A stretch of DNA of 63,377 nt, the filler included, from Octopus bimaculoides (lineage: Eukaryota), in NCBI RefSeq assembly GCF_001194135.2. It is 5 parts of 5 records of this genome, joined end to end, with 100 filler letters (N's around TTAATTAATTAA, not from the genome) between each part and the next. Parts side by side here need not be neighbours in the genome. Positions count along the whole stretch, not along the records: positions 40,985 to 51,992 come from NC_068986.1; 4 more parts are not named here. One strand, 5' to 3'. Numbering within the stretch: position 1 is the stretch's first letter; each line of letters opens with the position of its first letter. Shown in pieces: positions 40,885 to 49,631 of the stretch. The notes beneath the pieces are model-generated. The model made no database searches. It was not told the origin of the DNA and saw nothing but the letters and a program-made list of their open reading frames with translations. The translations under genes and the position numbers were made by a program.

Positions 40885-42557
40885 NNNNNNNNNNNNNNNN
40901 NNNNNNNNNNNNNNNNNNNNNNNNNNNNTTAATTAATTAANNNNNNNNNNNNNNNNNNNNNNNNNNNNNNNNNNNNNNNNNNNNTATATACATATACATG
41001 TATATATATACATATATATTGACGTAAACCCGCTGTTTTATCAGTTTCCGGTCACTTTTTTAAAGAATGACAGACGTGTCATTCTAACGATATATAGATG
41101 TGTCATATGAGATGCCTATCGTCGTCTGAAATAATGGAACAGTCATCTTCTTATATGTATTACTTACATATGTATGCATTTACTCAAACACGCGATGTCA
41201 GCATAACATCATGTTACAACGGACGAGTTATAATGATATAATTAATATTAATTTAAATATGCTAAAATAGTTACTAGGATATAATTGATTATTAAAAACA
41301 CTATTAAGCAAAATACACTTTAAATAGTAATAGTCGCTTCTCTCTTCAGACGTATGCTGTCAATAACATTTGATTTATATTATCGTCTAAGCTAATATCC
41401 TATTAAAAATCCTTGACATCATAATGTTATGTATATTGGCTGGATATCACATCTTAAGTGATCATAGAAATCAATCTAGAACATGTGTAGCAAGCGTCTT
41501 TCGATAGAGCTATTCTGTTAAGCTGTGATTATTTGCAGCGTATCGTTTTCCAATTTCTGACAATCATTCACTTTTTTTTTATAGAAAGTTATTTGTAGAA
41601 AACAAATATATACATATTTCAAACGTAAAGTTTTCAGTTACGTGTGGTATAAATATCGTATTTCACGATTGATAAAATACCATGTATTATCTTATACATA
41701 TATCGGATGGCAAGAACTACAACAGTTTCAAGTAAGATTAACAAGCATTAACTTAAGGCTGTCTCTAAAAAATATATTAATCTTGAATGTTAAAGAATTG
41801 ATTGTAAGATGTATGCAGAAATATAGAAATTCCGAATATCAATGTAAGCCACGAGAAAAAGCAAACATTGTATTCTAATTTATTCTAAAATGACCATCTT
41901 TATTATATCAATTCAGTCACTGGTTCAAAATGCTTTGTGCAGAAGTTGATGTCTTTTGTTCAGTAAGTTTTAATTGATTCATATTTATATTTTGAAGTTA
42001 TTTGATGGATGAAAGAAGCTACGATGTGTATTACACATCTAGTTAGAAACATTTAATTAATTATATAACTAACAGCACCCGTGGAAATTCCACGGTTGTT
42101 TTGAAAACCGTAAGATAGTTGGAAGTATATAAAGAACAATGGAATACATAGTCTCTTTTGAAATTATATATTGAAATACACAATTTCTTTTGAAATTGTA
42201 TATTTTTTAGATGGTATAAAAAAACCCACACAAGTAGTACAGAATGTGCAGTCTTAGATGACAACATTTCTGAAAGCACTATTCCTTGTTATACATTGGC
42301 TACTCCTTCTACCTTGAATGATGTTATCATTACTATGGAATAAAATCGAAGACATAAACTATCTATAAAATTATCCTGCTATTTCAAAACTACATTTGTA
42401 AAACTTTACCATATGTTAATAAACTGCATTACATCCATATTTTCATATCAGAGAAAAGTTCCTACGGCTAGATTTGAACAGAGTCACAACGAACGAAATA
42501 TATTAGCTGCCTCACTGAGCTGTGCATTCTACAGAACCATATCACTAATACACAAGT

Positions 42558-42800
42558 AGGTATGGCGGCATAACTAAAAAGTTTGCTTCTTAATCATGTT
42601 GTTTTTTGTTTAACCCCACTGCATAGCAACTTGGGCAAGTGTTTTCTACTATAAATGTCGAGTAGCTTAATAACTTGTGCGAAATTTGTTAGATTAAAAC
42701 AGCTTGAAAGCTTATCGTATGTATGTATGTATGTATGTATGTATGTATGTATGTATGTATGTATGTATGCATGTATGTATGTAAGCATGCATGCATGTGT

Positions 42801-42836
<36 letters not shown>

Positions 42837-42995
42837 AGGTTTGTATGTGTGAATGCGCCTATGTTTATGCCGTTTTTGAATTCGTTTATGTCGTTGAGGC
42901 ATGATAAGGTGACGTTCGACATATACACATTGATGAAGTAAGTGCCAAACTTAGAAATAATTACTGGGGTCGATATACCTGACTAAACTCTTGAA
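42558..42995 (+). mobile_element. Highly decayed SINE family A remnants split by microsatellites
   Basis: cttgggcaagtgttttctactata near 42630 and ctggggtcgat..gactaaa near 42965. Confidence 0.5.
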
Positions 42996-43322
42996 GGCAT
43001 TCCAATAATCGGGAAAAGACTAATTTAAAATACTTAGTCTCATGAAAATATGATATCTATCAGATTATGTCTTCGATTGCGTTCCATAGTTTGGAGCGTG
43101 ACACAAAATATAGGTAGGTGTGTACTAACTATTGTATTAATACACAAATAAAAAAAGTTAATTAACTGAAGCGACATCAGCTTCTATCCAGTCTAACGTG
43201 TGACTATGCCTTTTTTAATACAGTGGGGGGTAATAAAATAAACCAGAAAAATAACTGAAATTATTCAGGGTTTCACTGAATGTTTGTTTAAATATGTGCG
43301 GATAATTCTTTTGCGTTCAGTT

Positions 43323-43551
43323 TTACTTCGGGACTTTGCTTAAAAACACTCTGTTTTTACCGACCATGATTCCTTGTTGCGCTATCAAAACCTTCGATTT
43401 TAGATAAAACTTCTTGAAGAGAAAAAATGCTGTGGCACATACAAGACCCCCACAAAGCATGATAAAGGCTCCAGCAACGTGGCCTACATCAAATTGTTCC
43501 AAACGCAATTTATCTGATTTTTTATGACAACGATTAAGATCCTGCCACCAC
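43323..43551 (-). CDS. iGluR last identified exon, S2 end-M4-short C-tail
   Basis: Acceptor tactttcag. The first G completes the Arg codon, giving KRWWQDLNRC, then the M4 helix; TAA at 43325-43323. Confidence 0.9.
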
Positions 43552-45244
43552 CTGAAAGTAAAAGAATAAAATATTGAAACATTTACTTTCAGGTAGAATT
43601 AATAGTTCGGTACTTTCAAAACACGAAGTTAAGCAACAATGTTTAACACACACACACGCACGCGCGCGCAAACAGAGGGCCCTTTGTATAGTTTTTATGT
43701 TCCCAGCATTAATTATGCTAATACTAATTTAGCCATGGTTTTTCGGTCAGATAACGACTTAGAATAATTTATTCTTTGAGTTTTTACCTTTACAGACATA
43801 CATGTGTTCAATATTGTATATTTACTTAAAGGACCTCTTATAACTATATGAGCAAGTGCGGTGAACCCTATGCTTCACTGAGGGTATCTAATAATACTGA
43901 AATACGCCTAGATTTATCTCATGTATTTTCCGAAATATGATAATATTAGTGACAACTACTAATAACAGTTTCTTGTTGAGATTTGATGCTCGCTGCATTA
44001 GGTATGCTAACACCAACTAAGCTATTATCTAAAAAGTGAACTAAGTTAACAGACTGACTACAAATCCTATTACCAATAAATCAAAGTTATTTCTTTTTTC
44101 TCTACTGATATTTTTCTTAAATTTGTTTTGAATTGACTAAATGAACATCATCCAAGGTGGGCTTAACTTATAAATACCAAAAACGTAATACGTAAATATT
44201 TATATCCTAAATATCATTTACGTGAGTATTCAACTCATTGTCTATCTATAAATCATTCCTCCAATCATTCAACTGTTTAATTTCAGTCTATTTGTCCGTT
44301 TAGGCAAACTCTCACTCTTAACTGTCCATACCTTTGCATTTTCTCGGCTTTGATACTTACCGCTTGTTCATTTTCTCGATCAGTCCTTCTTCCTTCATTT
44401 TTAATAGTTCAATATTAATTTTTGTCTTGTAGAGAGCATTTTCTTTCATAGCAATACCATGTTCCATAATGAACACAGGTGTACCAACCTTGACAGTATC
44501 ACAATAAGTCATCGAAGCATGCGAAATAATTTGGTAGTCGAAGACAAACGCAAAGACGGAACTGTTGACGTTTTCGATCGCAGCAGTTGCATTCAAAAAA
44601 ACCCCTGACTCGTGCAGTCGGTCATAAAGCCTAGGGTACATATTACGTATCACTGCCATTGTATTAGAGTCTTTTACTGTGCCCCATGGCATAGAAGATA
44701 CTTCAAGATCTTCCAGAGAGTTTATAGGTTTTTCCAAACTCGGCATCGTAAGGAAAGCAGCTAAATTCGCTGTGTAAGTAGAAACGATGACTAAAACGAA
44801 GAAAGTATAACCCGCTGTTAGAATTCGTTGTGAAGTTCGATTTGGTGAAAAATCGGTACCTCTTGTCATGAGTGTGCCAATTGAGAACCACAGTGTCTCT
44901 TTAACTGTAAACTTACGTTCTTGATTAGGATAATCAAGTATAATAAACAAAATGCTCACGCCAACCACCGTGCCGAATATTGCCAACCATAAATGTGCTG
45001 AGAAGGAGACAAGAAACTGGAAAATGTGCTGAGTTCCTCGTGGCCTATTGATAAGTATGGTTATACCAGTTGTCATGATTCCAAGGCTAAAATCAACAAC
45101 TTTATCTCTTTCAGATGTCACTGATAAAGCCCCAACTCCAAGATCAGCTTGCTACAAATATAAACAAAAATATTCCTTATTCTTGTTACAATTTTACATG
45201 ACTACATATATATCTCCACAACCGATAAAATAGACAAATCAACA

Positions 45245-45297
<53 letters not shown>

Positions 45298-48294
45298 TGT
45301 GTGTACGTGTGTGTGTACGTTTGCGTGTGTGCGAATGTGTGAGTGTGTGGGGGTGTATACGAACGAAAGAAAAGAGCACTTAATACGACGTTTCGTTGAA
45401 TTTACACTGATTTGCATTAACAATTTGACGTGAAATCGTATTTTCGTGATTTTCTTCACTCGTGTGAGATTTTAAGTTTACACGCCAAGATAGATTCAAT
45501 AAATGTTTCGAGGAAAAATAGCCCAAAATATCTGGAATTCCAATCAAAATATCATTTGGATATTAGTTCTTAATAAGACATATTTATGCTATTAACATAA
45601 AAAGTTGCATGGAAAGTTGTAGGAATACGCATGAAACTTGAAGTAGATTTGAAATGTAGCTTTGAATCACCGATCTGCTATTTTCTGATCGCTTATTTCA
45701 AATTATGTTTGAGCGATTAATATTACAAAATAACGAAATAACATTTGAATCGCAAGGCTTGTATCTTGTAGACGACAATTTCACGGACATTCGGCTGTAG
45801 TTTGTCTGCAAGGGCTCTCAGAGAAAGATGCAAGTAATTAGTACAAATTTTAGTGATCACACCCAGGAATTTTTGTCAAGATTATTTTTTGGCAAACCGA
45901 GATGACCGGCTATGGGTAATTTTGTCATAGTCCAACAACTGGTTAAATGTAGTCATTAATTACTTTCAGTGACAGAACATACAGACTTTTCGATAATGCT
46001 GATAAAGTAAAAATACGAATGATTTTTAAAATAAATTTCCTAGCAATTAACTTTAGGTTTTGAAAAATACCGCAGGTAAATTAAAATTGGTGACCTGGTT
46101 ATGTTGCCTCTATTAAGTAAAGGGGTGAGAGAAATAAGATACTAACATTTGTTCTGATGGCTTCAATCATTCCATTCCAATTACCATCTGGATCCTTTAT
46201 TCCATAAGAATCGACGATCTTTAATTCGTATTTAAACGATAACCGGCGTTTTAACTCATTTATCAAATCAATTGTAAATCCGGTATAATTTCCATTTGTT
46301 CCATTTGTTTTGAATACAAACGGTCGCTCCTACAATAAAAATAGCAAATTAAATATTAACACTGAAGTTCTGATTATTTATAATAGTTTTCTCGACTATA
46401 GACGTTTATCTATCACAAGATTTTCTTAAATATGCAACAGGCTATTAGAGATAGAGCATCATAGGTCACGAAATTCTATCTTTCCACATAAGATAAACGT
46501 ACCTCTACAGCCATTATAATCTGTGTTTTGGCAAACAAGCCCTTCGAACGAATGGAATCACTGTTGTTTGTTTCAATGAAAGTCAGCCTTTCTCGAGAAG
46601 AATTCTTATCCGGCGTCCATATTCCGATCTAAAACATAGTACAAATACGAAATCTTATAAATTAAGATATGAACCAAGAATGTCGAAAAATTGACGAAAT
46701 CAGTTTTAGATTAAATGAAGATCATTGAAGTCTGTAATAAGTTTATTATTTGGTTACGGATTCATCTTGCAGTGTAAAATATTCCGTATTGCATTTATAT
46801 ATTAACCAAATTGTATAAGTACATTCGAAAGAATTTCTCAATAATTTGGGATCCAAATAATTCTAACACTTGAGTGATGTTGCTGAAGCTCATATTCTAT
46901 ATGAGGATTTATTATTATATTTGACAACTGTTTTACTAATGATTTGTATTTCATTTTCTTTTTGGACGAATAAATATATAAGTATACTTATTGGATGGAA
47001 CGGGGGAGGTCATGCTTGGAAGGGAAGCAACATCTTATTTACAAATTTTTAATTCAATTTTTTAAAATTTATATATACATTTAGTTATTTATCAGTCTCC
47101 TTTGGTTAACGTTCTTAAAGTCAATCTTAGTTCGTATTTGACATAGCAGGCGATTGGAAAGGTCTTTAATGACTAAGAACCCGTAAACATACTGAAGTAT
47201 TGTTTCTGTACACATAGTAAATAGGGGAATAATAACGAGTTCTTACATAAGGCTAAAAGTTTTAGGAGAAAGTAATTGTACGTGATTGACATTTTATTTT
47301 AAATACTCCGGAAGAAGGAAATGTAAAATTGAACTTGACCTGATTCGAACTAAAGATGTAACGAGCCTGGAAGAAATAACACGAAAGTATTTTGTCCAAC
47401 GTACTAAATGGTTCTGTCGACCACATTGAACAGGGACATAATATCACCATTGTACCACTATATGGAATGTACCCTACAGACATATATTGATTAATAAGTT
47501 AACTACCATAAAACGTTGTCATAGAGTATTCATAAATAAACTTTGTCATTCAATACAATACATTAGATGCCATGAAGTTCAAGGATTTCCGGAGAACAAT
47601 ACTGGAAAGATGTCTAAAAGACAGCACGAACTGACTAGTCTATGCAATTCGTATCTTGTCACCGTTATACCCATAGCCTTGTCTTTGTTGTAATGCACCT
47701 GTAAAAAAAAGAGACATTAAATTCCTTTTAACCAAGTGTGCATCACGCCAAGTATGTAGAACCAGAGTGGTGGCATAATTTCCTGCTAAAAGTATGCATT
47801 GACTTTGCGCTAAAACTGACGGAAGCTTGCAACTACCGAATTCAATTCCTCGTGCGGAAAATCGTTTTTCCTGATAGACATATAGCCAAGTCAGAAAACA
47901 AAAAGTCTCTCATTAGCTTAACGCAACTGAAGCAGTGATAATTATCGGTGCAGTAGAAGGTATAGATATGTGAAAGAGAAAGACGGGAGAGATAAAAGAA
48001 AAGAACAAAGAAGAATTGTTGATTTACCGCCTTGTTATCTTGACTATGTTGGTACAGATGTAAGGAATAGTTTTTCCGCTCACCAGTGGCATTAAAAGCA
48101 ATCCATCCTGTTTTACCATCTTCAATTACCACCTGACAGAAAGAACTTCAAATATTAATCCTAATGTCTCGAAGGGCTATCATAGAGTATGATTTATACA
48201 ATGCACCATGTTTTTTGTTATGCTTCGTACAAATACATCTCTTAGATAGAAGAACGTAACAGGCAATGGCTTTACGATTCATGACATTATTTTG

Positions 48295-48340
<46 letters not shown>

Positions 48341-49265
48341 NNNNNNNNNNNNNNNNNNNNNNNNNNNNNNNNNNNNNNNNNNNNNNNNNNNNNNNNNNNN
48401 NNNNNNNNNNNNNNNNNNNNNNNNNNNNNNNNNNNNNNNNNNNNNNNNNNNNNNNNNNNNNNNNNNNNNNNNNNNNNNNNNNNNNNNNNNNNNNNNNNNN
48501 NNNNNNNNNNNNNNNNNNNNNNNNNNNNNNNNNNNNNNNNNNNNNNNNNNNNNNNNNNNNNNNNNNNNNNNNNNNNNNNNNNNNNNNNNNNNNNNNNNNN
48601 NNNNNNNNNNNNNNNNNNNNNNNNNNNNNNNNNNNNNNNNNNNNNNNNNNNNNNNNNNNNNNNNNNNNNNNNNNNNNNNNNNNNNNNNNNNNNNNNNNNN
48701 NNNNNNNNNNNNNNNNNNNNNNNNNNNNNNNNNNNNNNNNNNNNNNNNNNNNNNNNNNNNNNNNNNNNNNNNNNNNNNNNNNNNNNNNNNNNNNNNNNNN
48801 NNNNNNNNNNNNNNACACACAATGTACCAGAGTGTTGGCCGTCATATGATGGTTAAGACTCTAGTGTATTAATATAATGGTAGCAATTGTGGTGAACATT
48901 TTGTTATAAATTTTTAAGTTAGCGAATACTCTAGTGATTAATGCAAAAACAAATAAACAACACAAACAAACCAACAAAACAAACAATCAAGCAGAATACT
49001 TACTCAGCTAACAAACAGCTTGAATAGCATTTAATGAAAATGCTCATTACAATATGTATTAACTATTACATATCATTTTCTCAACTACAACCAACTATTA
49101 TGTCATTTATTACTCCTCCTGTCGCTATGATTCTATTAACTAACTCTGTGTGTGTGTGTTGTGTGTGTGTGTTGTGTGTGTGTGTTGTGTGTGTGTGTTG
49201 TGTGTGTGTGTTGTGTGTGTGTTGTGTGTGTGTCGNNNNNNNNNNNNNNNNNNNNNNNNNNNNNN

Positions 49266-49317
<52 letters not shown>

Positions 49318-49561
49318 TATGTATGTGTGTATGTGTGCGTGCGTGCGCGTAGCGTTCCTTCACTTGTTGCCTACCAGCTACCCAAGTATGTGCACTTATC
49401 CTTCACCTGTTATGTTAACTCTATCTGTGTTTTCCTCTTCTCCCCGTTCTCTCTCTATATGACGTAAGCCTTGGCTGGAGAAATCGAGTAACCTTATTAA
49501 CATTTATATCGGGTATTGTTTATTACAGATCCTTAAACGTACATAATAATACACACACACA

Positions 49562-49631
<70 letters not shown>

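What the first reader, a model, noticed from the sequence alone, without database searches (positions are those of the whole stretch)
44361..46329. Receptor with a delta/GluN1-like (glycine/D-serine-type) pocket but a retained Thr655
Seen, aligned by eye to GluA2 numbering: R485 kept (SER); P478 to A and T480 to S (GALSVT, like GluD SALTIT); G653 to S; S654 to N; T655 kept; L704 to F and E705 to D (FVFD, like GluN1/GluD WD). Established: S653 plus an aromatic at 704 and D705 characterise glycine/D-serine-binding subunits, while T655 contacts the glutamate gamma-carboxyl. The sequence lacks the TP(Q)GGG pore of IR25a/IR8a. Inference: a lineage-specific subunit with a hybrid pocket that may bind a small amino acid or a non-canonical ligand, possibly in chemosensation.
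Basis: partly seen in the sequence, partly recalled or inferred. Interest (0 to 1): 0.8.

Follow-up and report, generated by a model that had tools for sequence, protein, structure and literature searches.

The report
Orphan mollusc glutamate-receptor-family subunit gene
This is the back two-thirds of an already annotated Octopus bimaculoides gene for a glutamate-receptor-family ion-channel subunit; it belongs to a mollusc-only branch whose ligand nobody has measured, and its binding pocket and pore differ in a conserved way from every tested receptor class.

Summary
Exons at 46147-46329 and 44361-45151 (minus strand) encode an iGluR ligand-binding domain and pore. A HMMER alignment to GluA2 gives P478A, T480S, R485 kept, G653S, S654N, T655 kept, L704F and E705D.

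The piece holds seven GT-AG exons. Their translation equals residues 260-832 of an 832-aa Octopus bimaculoides protein that NCBI calls "glutamate receptor ionotropic, kainate 2".

That name is not supported by the tree. The gene sits in a 100%-supported clade in which every named member is a mollusc: cephalopods, gastropods and bivalves. AMPA or kainate receptors were never its sister in 400 bootstrap replicates. Profile scores place it equally far from Delta receptors and from other spiralian orphan AKDF receptors.

The "hybrid" pocket is not an octopus peculiarity. A478, S480, R485, S/T653, T655, F/Y704, D705 and H732 are near-invariant across 33 representatives. So are a non-Gln Q/R site and a K/R at the next position.

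Published work already lists this octopus "GRIK2" as an orphan and describes mollusc-specific iGluR clades. None has been characterised functionally.

The ligand cannot be read from these motifs. It is probably an alpha-amino acid, but small neutral residues versus glutamate remains unresolved. A chemosensory role is untested.

The parts
51851..51907 (-). Coding exon, residues 260-278 of the 832-aa protein (N-terminal domain). Earlier exons lie beyond the edge of the piece.
   Evidence: AG/GT splice sites. The concatenated exons translate exactly to P0276 residues 260-832.
50427..50657 (-). Coding exon, residues 279-355 (N-terminal domain).
   Evidence: 100% tblastn match to P0276; AG/GT splice sites.
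48028..48132 (-). Coding exon, residues 356-390 (end of the N-terminal domain).
46503..46628 (-). Coding exon, residues 391-432 (linker between the N-terminal domain and the LBD, and the start of S1).
46147..46329 (-). Coding exon, residues 433-493: first part of LBD segment S1, with E433 (GluA2 E402) and Y474 (Y450).
   Evidence: Pfam Lig_chan-Glu_bd, 7.8e-29.
44361..45151 (-). One 791-nt exon, residues 494-757. It carries the end of S1 (A501, S503, R508), M1, the pore loop, M3 (STYTANLAAFLT) and most of S2 (V652 K653 D654 S655 N656 T657; F697 D698 Y699; C710; H724).
   Evidence: Pfam Lig_chan, 4.6e-30.
44843..44893 (-). M2 pore loop LWFSIGTLMTRGTDFSP. The Q/R site is T589, the next residue is R590, and the +4 site is D593.
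   Evidence: Gap-free alignment to GluA2 FMQQGCD. K/R at +1 in all 33 clade representatives.
44660..44677 (-). The alphaF ligand-selectivity motif V-K-D-S-N-T, corresponding to GluA2 L650-T655.
44534..44542 (-). The beta10/alphaI motif F-D-Y, corresponding to GluA2 L704-E705-S706.
43323..43551 (-). Last coding exon, residues 757-832 plus the TAA stop. It carries the end of S2 (WWQDLNRC, C765), M4 and a short C-terminal tail.

Best explanation
Shown:
- The piece carries the last seven exons (residues 260-832) of the Octopus bimaculoides gene for an 832-aa ionotropic glutamate-receptor-family subunit.
- The subunit has the full architecture: signal-peptide-like start, N-terminal domain, two-lobed ligand-binding domain S1/S2, M1, re-entrant pore loop, M3, M4 and a short tail.
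- It belongs to a mollusc-wide orphan lineage inside the AKDF subfamily. That lineage lies outside the AMPA, kainate and core Delta classes.

Inferred:
- It assembles into tetrameric ligand-gated cation channels.
- R508 (GluA2 R485) binds the ligand's alpha-carboxylate. D698 (E705), with E433 and Y474, holds the alpha-amine. The agonist is therefore most likely an alpha-amino acid.
- The side-chain sub-site is narrowed by S655 (G653S) and F697 (L704F), but still offers the T657 (T655) hydroxyl. H724 replaces the usual hinge tyrosine.
- My best guess for the ligand is a receptor tuned to small neutral amino acids (Gly, Ala, Ser or D-Ser), possibly with residual glutamate sensitivity. This has about 0.4 probability, against about 0.3 for glutamate or aspartate as the main agonist.
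- The pore has Thr at the Q/R site, a fixed Arg next to it, and the +4 Asp retained. This predicts low Ca2+ permeability and weak polyamine block, and possibly a need for a partner subunit.
For: Gene and identity:
- Seven AG/GT exons translate exactly to P0276 residues 260-832.
- Pfam finds Lig_chan, Lig_chan-Glu_bd, SBP_bac_3 and ANF_receptor.
- The AlphaFold model aligns over 715-770 columns to full-length GluA2 and GluK2.

Clade:
- Orthologs are 85% identical in Argonauta, 60% in another cephalopod transcript, and 42-47% in gastropods and bivalves.
- NJ bootstrap support for the clade is 100%. Its sister is a gastropod-only paralog group in about 85% of replicates, then spiralian orphans in about 45-50%, and AMPA or kainate in 0 of 400.
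- HMM and hhalign scores run Delta ~ spiralian orphans > kainate > AMPA.

Pocket and pore:
- The residues are conserved in 33 representatives.
- H732 occurs in 0 of 147 sequences outside the clade, and K/R587 in 4 of 147.

Expression:
- An intronless 3.2-kb transcript contig encodes the 833-aa ortholog P0277.

Literature:
- R485 plus an acidic 705 indicates an amino-acid ligand (PMC6307864).
- All glutamate-selective receptors tested have Gly at the first alphaF position (PMC13648236).
- Ser at the Q/R/N site lowers Ca2+ permeation and polyamine block, and the +4 Asp is needed for that block (PMC12226733).
Against: - No member of the clade has been tested functionally, so every statement about ligand and conductance is inference from motifs. 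The same literature shows these motifs to be unreliable predictors.
- S-x-T motifs made by mutation keep glutamate potency, so glutamate could be the main agonist.
- Deep nodes of my tree are NJ only and poorly supported (21-57%). The relation to Delta, Phi, "Zeta" or "group II" is therefore unresolved.
- No deuterostome Phi anchor and no confirmed molluscan Delta anchor could be included.
- The oyster Delta receptor, a different molluscan AKDF orphan, failed to reach the oocyte surface (PMC10861852). This warns that such subunits may not work alone.
- No tissue expression data were available for the octopus gene.
Confidence: 0.75

Rival explanations
1. It is what the database name says: a kainate-type (GRIK2-like), glutamate-gated receptor subunit.
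For: - NCBI's name for P0276 is "kainate 2".
- Kainate structures are among the best PDB sequence hits.
- T655, E402, Y450 and R485 are kept.
- The molluscan consensus S-A-T differs from the GluK2 G-A-T by one residue.
- G-to-S mutants of GST and GAT motifs stay glutamate-preferring, and a Y-D receptor can be glutamate-selective (PMC13648236).
Against: - Kainate or AMPA was never the sister group in 400 bootstrap replicates.
- Kainate and AMPA HMMs score 30-50 bits below the Delta and spiralian-orphan HMMs.
- Greer et al. list the octopus GRIK2 as an orphan, not a kainate receptor (PMC5225553).
- The defining G653, M/L704-E705, Y732 and QQ pore residues are all changed, and changed across the whole clade.
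Confidence: 0.05
2. It is a divergent protostome member of the Delta (GluD) family. On this reading it binds GABA, D-serine or glycine, and may work mainly as a synaptic organiser with little channel activity.
For: - The Delta HMM gives the top score for the two octopod sequences (328 and 327 bits). hhalign gives Delta 683 against 688 for the spiralian orphans.
- The best non-mollusc phmmer hits are amphioxus, starfish and nemertean proteins that NCBI's automatic annotation names delta-like.
- It shares A478, V650, D652, S653 and D705, and the local strings GTV-DS and AFV-D, with GluD2.
- Protostome Deltas are reported as early-branching and functionally unresolved (PMC10861852).
Against: - Delta was sister to the clade plus its gastropod paralogs in only 7-10% of bootstrap replicates, and sister to the clade alone in about 1%.
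- It lacks W704, the non-polar residue at 655, Y732 and the QQ pore that all Delta sequences in my set share.
- The Lottia ortholog LOTGIDRAFT_103475 is not one of the two Lottia genes that Ramos-Vicente et al. class as Delta.
Confidence: 0.12
3. It is a peripheral chemosensory receptor, IR-like in role, that detects environmental amino acids or other small molecules in suckers or the olfactory organ.
For: - The clade is mollusc-specific, and its gastropod sister paralogs have lost R485, as IRs do.
- A receptor of the mollusc-specific GluR-m9 clade is expressed in bivalve sensory tentacles (PMC11682238). It is not known whether that is the same clade.
- IR25 is expressed in cephalopod suckers, according to citations.
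Against: - The protein keeps the N-terminal domain and an intact R/S/D amino-acid triad, and does not group with the IR25-like sequence.
- No expression data for this gene were examined.
- This rival concerns where the protein acts, not how. It is compatible with the main explanation.
Confidence: 0.1
4. It cannot form a conducting homomeric channel. The fixed positive charge next to the Q/R site makes it an obligate modulatory partner of other AKDF subunits, or a non-conducting receptor.
For: - K or R at GluA2 position 587 occurs in all 33 clade representatives, but in only 4 of 147 other sequences.
- From general knowledge: Arg at the adjacent Q/R site in GluA2 strongly lowers conductance and Ca2+ permeability.
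- The oyster GluD gave no current.
Against: - The charge is at +1, not at the Q/R site itself, and the direction of its side chain is unknown.
- The SYTANLAAF gate, the +4 Asp, M4 and the S2 disulfide are all intact.
Confidence: 0.15

Closest known systems
Mollusc-specific orphan iGluR clades. These have been named GluR-m6/m9/m11/m12 (Andouche et al. 2021, as cited in PMC11682238 and PMC12837371), Phi subclasses I-IV plus the mollusc-only class 'Zeta' (Zeng et al. 2021, PMC8437780), and AKDF 'group II' (Singh et al. 2025, PMC12226733).
   Same: - The clade is found only in molluscs and lies inside AKDF but outside AMPA and kainate.
- It is functionally uncharacterised.
- O. bimaculoides sequences were in those published data sets, and the octopus 'GRIK2' is listed as an orphan (PMC5225553).
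   Different: - I could not map this clade to one of those published names, because their trees and sequence lists are not held as text.
- None of the held texts I read describes the conserved pocket signature (S653, T655, F/Y704, D705, H732) or the K/R at Q/R+1. I did not search the library for those motifs.
Delta receptors (GluD1/GluD2 and the invertebrate GABA-gated GluDs)
   Same: - It shares A478, V650, D652, S653 and D705.
- Profile similarity is comparable: the Delta HMM ties for top score.
- It has the same overall domain architecture.
   Different: - It has T655 instead of V/L, F704 instead of W, H732 instead of Y, and a T-R pore instead of Q-Q.
- The tree does not recover it inside Delta.
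Kainate receptors (GluK1-5), the source of the database name
   Same: - Sequence identity is similar, at about 34-37%.
- It has the alphaF A/N-T-M string, R485, E402 and Y450.
- PDB E-values are similar.
   Different: - G653S, M704F, E705D and Y732H.
- The pore differs.
- Kainate receptors were never the sister group in bootstraps.
Glycine/D-serine-binding NMDA subunit GluN1
   Same: - The local string TVK-S (GluN1 ATVKQSSV) is shared.
- An aromatic residue is followed by Asp at 704/705.
   Different: - GluN1 belongs to a different subfamily; the NMDA-like HMM scores lowest.
- GluN1 has V at 655, W at 704, P478 and an N-S pore.
Aplysia GluR6 and other spiralian orphan AKDF receptors (Ostrea, Pecten, Tubulanus, Owenia)
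   Same: - This is the most frequent next-nearest group in bootstraps (about 45-50%).
- It ties for the top HMM and hhalign score.
- Several members also combine S653 with T655.
   Different: - They carry W-D at 704/705 and Y or F at 732, and have other pore residues.
- Support for the grouping is weak.

Membership tests
Ionotropic glutamate receptor superfamily | A bipartite S1/S2 clamshell LBD interrupted by M1, a pore loop and M3, followed by M4 | tested here: met
   Pfam Lig_chan 4.6e-30, Lig_chan-Glu_bd 7.8e-29 and SBP_bac_3 2.3e-18. Collinear alignment to GluA2. M1, M2, M3 and M4 were located.
Ionotropic glutamate receptor superfamily | The SYTANLAAF gate motif in M3 | tested here: met
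   STYTANLAAFLT at residues 617-628.
Ionotropic glutamate receptor superfamily | An N-terminal LIVBP-like domain, as in iGluRs and IR25a/IR8a but absent from most IRs | tested here: met
   Pfam ANF_receptor scores 27.3 bits against a cut-off of 25.4. Residues 150-410 are modelled with pLDDT 67-91, and Foldseek aligns 715-770 columns to full-length GluA2 and GluK2. Only residues 260 onward lie in this piece.
Amino-acid-binding iGluR (criterion of Ramos-Vicente et al. 2018) | Arg at 485 and an acidic residue at 705, which hold the alpha-carboxylate and alpha-amine | tested here: met
   R508 and D698. Both are conserved across the clade.
AMPA/kainate classes | Phylogenetic placement inside the class | tested here: not met
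   Sister group in 0 of 400 NJ bootstrap replicates. Lower HMM and hhalign scores than Delta or the spiralian orphans.
AMPA/kainate classes | Glutamate-type pocket G653 / T655 / L-or-M704 / E705, and a Q(R)-Q pore | tested here: not met
   Only T655 is kept. The other positions are S653, F704, D705 and T-R in the pore.
Delta class | Phylogenetic placement with GluD1/2 and the invertebrate GluDs | tested here: inconclusive
   Delta is sister in 7-10% of replicates at most, but the Delta HMM ties for best score. No verified molluscan GluD anchor was available, and only NJ trees were built.
Delta class | Pocket S653, non-polar 655, and W704-D705 | tested here: not met
   S653 and D705 are present, but 655 is Thr and 704 is Phe.
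Phi class / 'Zeta' class / GluR-m clades (published mollusc AKDF groups) | Placement with the published reference members | not testable with these tools
   Reference sequences and trees are not held. Only indirect hints exist: the clade is mollusc-only and has a non-Gln Q/R site, as reported for Phi.
NMDA subfamily | Placement with GluN subunits, and an N at the Q/R/N site | tested here: not met
   Lowest HMM and hhalign scores. The pore is T-R.
Variant ionotropic receptors (IRs, including IR25a) | Grouping with IR25a or the IRs, and, for most IRs, loss of the N-terminal domain and of the R/T/D-E triad | tested here: not met
   It does not group with the IR25a-like P0041. The N-terminal domain and the triad are retained.

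The most novel reading that the evidence does not exclude
The clade is a mollusc-specific class of excitatory receptors for a transmitter or cue other than glutamate, for example glycine, D- or L-serine, alanine, GABA or taurine. The invariant S653/T655/F704/D705/H732 pocket would define a new selectivity solution. The fixed K/R beside the Q/R site would give an unusual permeation profile, such as Ca2+-impermeable and polyamine-insensitive, or with mixed cation and anion permeability.
Probability: 0.25. Interest if true: 0.6.

Novelty: new member of a known kind. Interest (0 to 1): 0.35.

Why it matters
Ligand selectivity across the iGluR family is being re-mapped. Glycine-, GABA-, aspartate- and alanine-gated members have recently been found in the Epsilon, Delta and AKDF branches. 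The mollusc-specific AKDF clades remain untested.

This clade is a clean candidate for deorphanisation, for three reasons:
- It has one ortholog per species from bivalves to octopus.
- Its pocket signature is invariant and falls between the "glutamate" and "glycine" rules.
- Its pore carries a charge that is rare elsewhere in the family.

Knowing its agonist would show whether cephalopod and other molluscan nervous or sensory systems use an extra excitatory amino-acid channel. It would also test how far motif-based ligand prediction can be trusted.

As a genome feature it is otherwise ordinary: an annotated, intact, conserved gene with a misleading automatic name.

Tried and rejected
- **Prokaryote-style ORF reading.** This gave only the large exon. 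A six-frame scan plus tblastn with mollusc homologs was needed to find all seven exons.
- **First exon coordinates.** They were off by 1-3 nt at four junctions and were corrected.
- **Word-indexed protein search with the 442-aa fragment.** It missed the identical octopus protein. That protein appeared only in the profile search, after the exhaustive HMMER search had found the Argonauta ortholog.
- **Reference sequences for Phi and molluscan Delta from paper supplements.** The eLife alignment is truncated and lacks them. The PNAS supplement holds only an OCR alignment without the oyster sequence. The scallop paper has no held supplement. Andouche et al. 2021 is not held.
- **Result of those gaps.** The clade could not be matched to a published clade name, and no deuterostome Phi anchor is in my tree.
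- **Third word-indexed search.** I considered one with a spiralian orphan as query and rejected it, because that index had proved patchy for invertebrate deuterostomes.
- **Rfam, tRNA and tandem-repeat scans of the piece.** They found only microsatellites.
- **Docking or pocket-volume analysis.** Not possible, because model coordinates are not returned.
- **Pseudogene reading.** Rejected: the reading frame is intact, the splice sites are canonical, and the gene is conserved with a transcribed ortholog.
Full report
**What is in the sequence**

The piece (40985-51992) is AT-rich eukaryotic DNA with microsatellites and three assembly gaps. On the minus strand it carries seven exons with canonical AG/GT borders:
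- 51851-51907
- 50427-50657
- 48028-48132
- 46503-46628
- 46147-46329
- 44361-45151
- 43323-43551

Joined, they translate without a stop. The product is identical to residues 260-832 of an 832-aa protein, P0276, which NCBI names [quoted passage not shown]. The first 259 residues lie beyond the edge of the piece.

The finding's range covers the fifth and sixth of these exons and the intron between them. No RNA gene or tRNA is present, and no sign of another gene turned up.

**Check of the observation**

In GluA2 numbering:

| GluA2 position | Octopus residue |
|---|---|
| E402 | kept (E433) |
| Y450 | kept (Y474) |
| P478 | A501 |
| T480 | S503 |
| R485 | kept (R508) |
| L650 | V |
| D651 | K |
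| S652 | D |
| G653 | S655 |
| S654 | N656 |
| T655 | kept (T657) |
| L704 | F697 |
| E705 | D698 |
| S706 | Y699 |
| Y732 | H724 |

I checked my recalled GluD2 and GluN1 sequences against PDB entries 6lu9 and 1pb7. The local resemblance to GluD2 (SALTIT, GTVLDSAV, AFVWD) and to GluN1 (ATVKQSSV, AFIWD) is real.

**Domain architecture**

- Pfam finds Lig_chan, Lig_chan-Glu_bd and SBP_bac_3, and, in the full protein, a marginal ANF_receptor domain.
- M1, the pore loop, M3 with STYTANLAAFLT, and M4 are all present. So is the S2 disulfide pair, C710-C765.
- An AlphaFold2 model (mean pLDDT 70; LBD and membrane domain 75-90; first 150 residues poor) aligns over 715-770 columns to full-length GluA2 and GluK2 structures.

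**Relatives**

An exhaustive HMMER search of 1.8 billion representatives gave a steep fall in score:

| Hit | Bits | Identity |
|---|---|---|
| Argonauta hians | 816 | 85% |
| Haliotis | 400 | 47% |
| Potamilus | 389 | 47% |
| Mya | 255 | 44% |
| All other receptors | 231 or less | 35-37% |

- The word-indexed searches added Pinctada, Patella, Tegillarca, Lottia, Bulinus and Candidula orthologs, many unnamed genomic fragments, the octopus protein itself, and a 60%-identical 833-aa protein.
- That 833-aa protein sits intronless on a 3.2-kb contig assembled from run SRR29271483. It is therefore a transcript, so the ortholog is expressed in another cephalopod.
- Every named member of the clade is a mollusc.

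**Phylogenetic placement**

I built neighbour-joining trees on about 390 aligned LBD and membrane-domain columns from 156-157 sequences. I used two distance corrections and 200 bootstrap replicates each.
- The clade has 100% support, and the three cephalopods group together in 98.5-100% of replicates.
- Its sister, in about 85% of replicates, is a small gastropod-only paralog group: Lottia LOTGIDRAFT_103976 and two Haliotis proteins.
- The next group out, in about 45-50% of replicates, is a set of spiralian orphans: Aplysia GluR6 and proteins from Ostrea, Pecten, Elysia, the nemertean Tubulanus and the annelid Owenia.
- Delta receptors were sister in 7-10% of replicates.
- AMPA or kainate receptors were sister in none of 400.

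Class HMMs built from the same alignment score the clade as Delta ~ spiralian orphans > kainate > AMPA, by 30-50 bits. hhalign gives 688, 683, 667 and 654 in that order.

The gene is therefore an AKDF-subfamily receptor of class-level distinctness. It is not a kainate receptor. Deeper relations are unresolved with the methods available here.

**What is already published**

- Greer et al. 2017 list the O. bimaculoides "GRIK2" among orphans that fit no vertebrate subtype (PMC5225553).
- Ramos-Vicente et al. 2018 did not include the Lottia ortholog. Their two Lottia Delta genes have other identifiers.
- Zeng et al. 2021 report Phi subclasses I-IV in molluscs and a mollusc-only class "Zeta" (PMC8437780).
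- Andouche et al. 2021, as cited in PMC11682238 and PMC12837371, define mollusc-specific clades GluR-m6, m9, m11 and m12.
- Singh et al. 2025 describe an uncharacterised AKDF "group II" from molluscs, annelids and others (PMC12226733).
- Rosano et al. 2024 could not record from the oyster Delta receptor (PMC10861852).

I could not match this clade to one of those names, because the trees and sequence sets are not held. The existence of the gene and of mollusc-specific orphan clades is nevertheless known. I found no functional data on any of them.

**The pocket is a clade signature**

Across 33 cluster representatives:
- A478, S480 and R485 are nearly invariant.
- Position 653 is S in 29 and T in 3.
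- Position 654 is A, except N in cephalopods and S in one sequence.
- T655 is invariant.
- Position 704 is F or Y.
- D705 is present in 31 of 32.
- H732 is invariant.

Outside the clade, among 147 aligned sequences:
- None has H732.
- Seven combine S/T653 with T655, but with other residues at 704.
- Four combine F/Y704 with D705, but none of these has both S/T653 and T655.

The "hybrid" pocket has therefore been held by selection since before the molluscan classes split. What is particular to cephalopods is only N654, and in octopods T at the Q/R site.

**What the pocket says about the ligand**

- R485 plus an acidic 705 is the accepted sign of an alpha-amino-acid ligand (PMC6307864).
- Wang et al. 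2026 found Gly at the first alphaF position in all glutamate-selective receptors they aligned. They found Ser, Tyr or Ala there in receptors selective for glycine, alanine, D-serine or GABA. This favours a non-glutamate ligand here.
- The same study weakens that inference in four ways:
  - GluA2 G-to-S (an S-S-T motif) keeps full glutamate potency and only adds glycine and D-serine responses.
  - G-to-S in a G-A-T Epsilon receptor, which gives exactly the molluscan S-A-T, adds only small glycine currents.
  - Threonine at the third alphaF position supports glutamate potency in AMPA receptors.
  - Glutamate-selective receptors can carry Y-D at 704/705, and swaps often fail to change selectivity in Delta and placozoan AKDF receptors.
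- My estimate is therefore soft:

| Main agonist | Probability |
|---|---|
| Small neutral amino acids | about 0.4 |
| Glutamate or aspartate | about 0.3 |
| GABA or another ligand | about 0.15 |
| No ligand-gated current when expressed alone | about 0.15 |

**The pore**

The alignment between LWFS and SYTANLAAF has no gaps, so the Q/R site is T589 and the next residue is R590. D593 sits at the +4 site.
- All clade members have K or R at +1 and a non-Gln residue (T, M or K) at the Q/R site.
- Only 4 of 147 other sequences have K/R at +1.
- A Ser at the Q/R/N site lowers Ca2+ permeation and polyamine block in both a placozoan receptor and GluA2. The +4 Asp is required for that block (PMC12226733).
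- By analogy I infer low Ca2+ permeability and weak rectification. The effect of the neighbouring fixed charge is unknown and could include poor homomeric conductance.

**Verdict**

The gene is not an AMPA or kainate ortholog, it is lineage-specific, and its pocket is intermediate.
- The lineage is Mollusca, and the gene is already annotated and already known as an orphan.
- It is a reasonable deorphanisation target, not a new kind of system.

Noticed in passing
window 44852-44866 (minus strand), pore loop: The Q/R site is Thr (T589). It is followed by a fixed Arg (R590), and the +4 Asp is kept. K or R at this +1 position is present in all 33 clade representatives but in only 4 of 147 other iGluRs aligned.
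   Followed up: partly
window 44459-44461 (minus strand): The hinge tyrosine (GluA2 Y732) is His (H724). This is so in every clade member that covers the position, and in none of 147 sequences outside the clade.
   Followed up: partly
P0097, P0131, P0192 (Lottia LOTGIDRAFT_103976 and two Haliotis rubra proteins): The gastropod-only sister paralogs of the clade have lost the ligand-anchoring Arg485 in two of three sequences (to Met and to Thr). That is the kind of degenerate pocket seen in chemosensory IRs. The Lottia paralog and the Lottia ortholog lie on contigs of the same recorded length, 7.12 Mb, which suggests one scaffold.
   Followed up: no
P0276 (the protein encoded by the window): The public name 'glutamate receptor ionotropic, kainate 2' is not supported by the tree or by the profile scores. 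The Argonauta ortholog is named only 'uncharacterized protein LOC115213333'.
   Followed up: yes
L002 (Logan contig of SRR29271483), 343-2844: A 60%-identical 833-aa ortholog is encoded without introns on a 3.2-kb contig, so it is a transcript. It probably comes from a decapodiform cephalopod. It has T653, N654 and T655, with Y704 and D705.
   Followed up: partly
window 44361-45151, and P0004 and P0008-P0024: The end of S1, M1 to M3 and most of S2 lie in one 791-nt exon. The same stretch appears as a stand-alone ORF of about 266 aa on many unannotated genomic contigs, presumably molluscan, so this exon structure looks conserved.
   Followed up: no
window 48341-48814, 49236-49265, 49632-49661: Runs of N (assembly gaps) lie inside introns and are flanked by (TA)n, (TG)n and (AC)n microsatellites. 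A 46-nt (AGA)n tract lies at 49916-49961.
   Followed up: no
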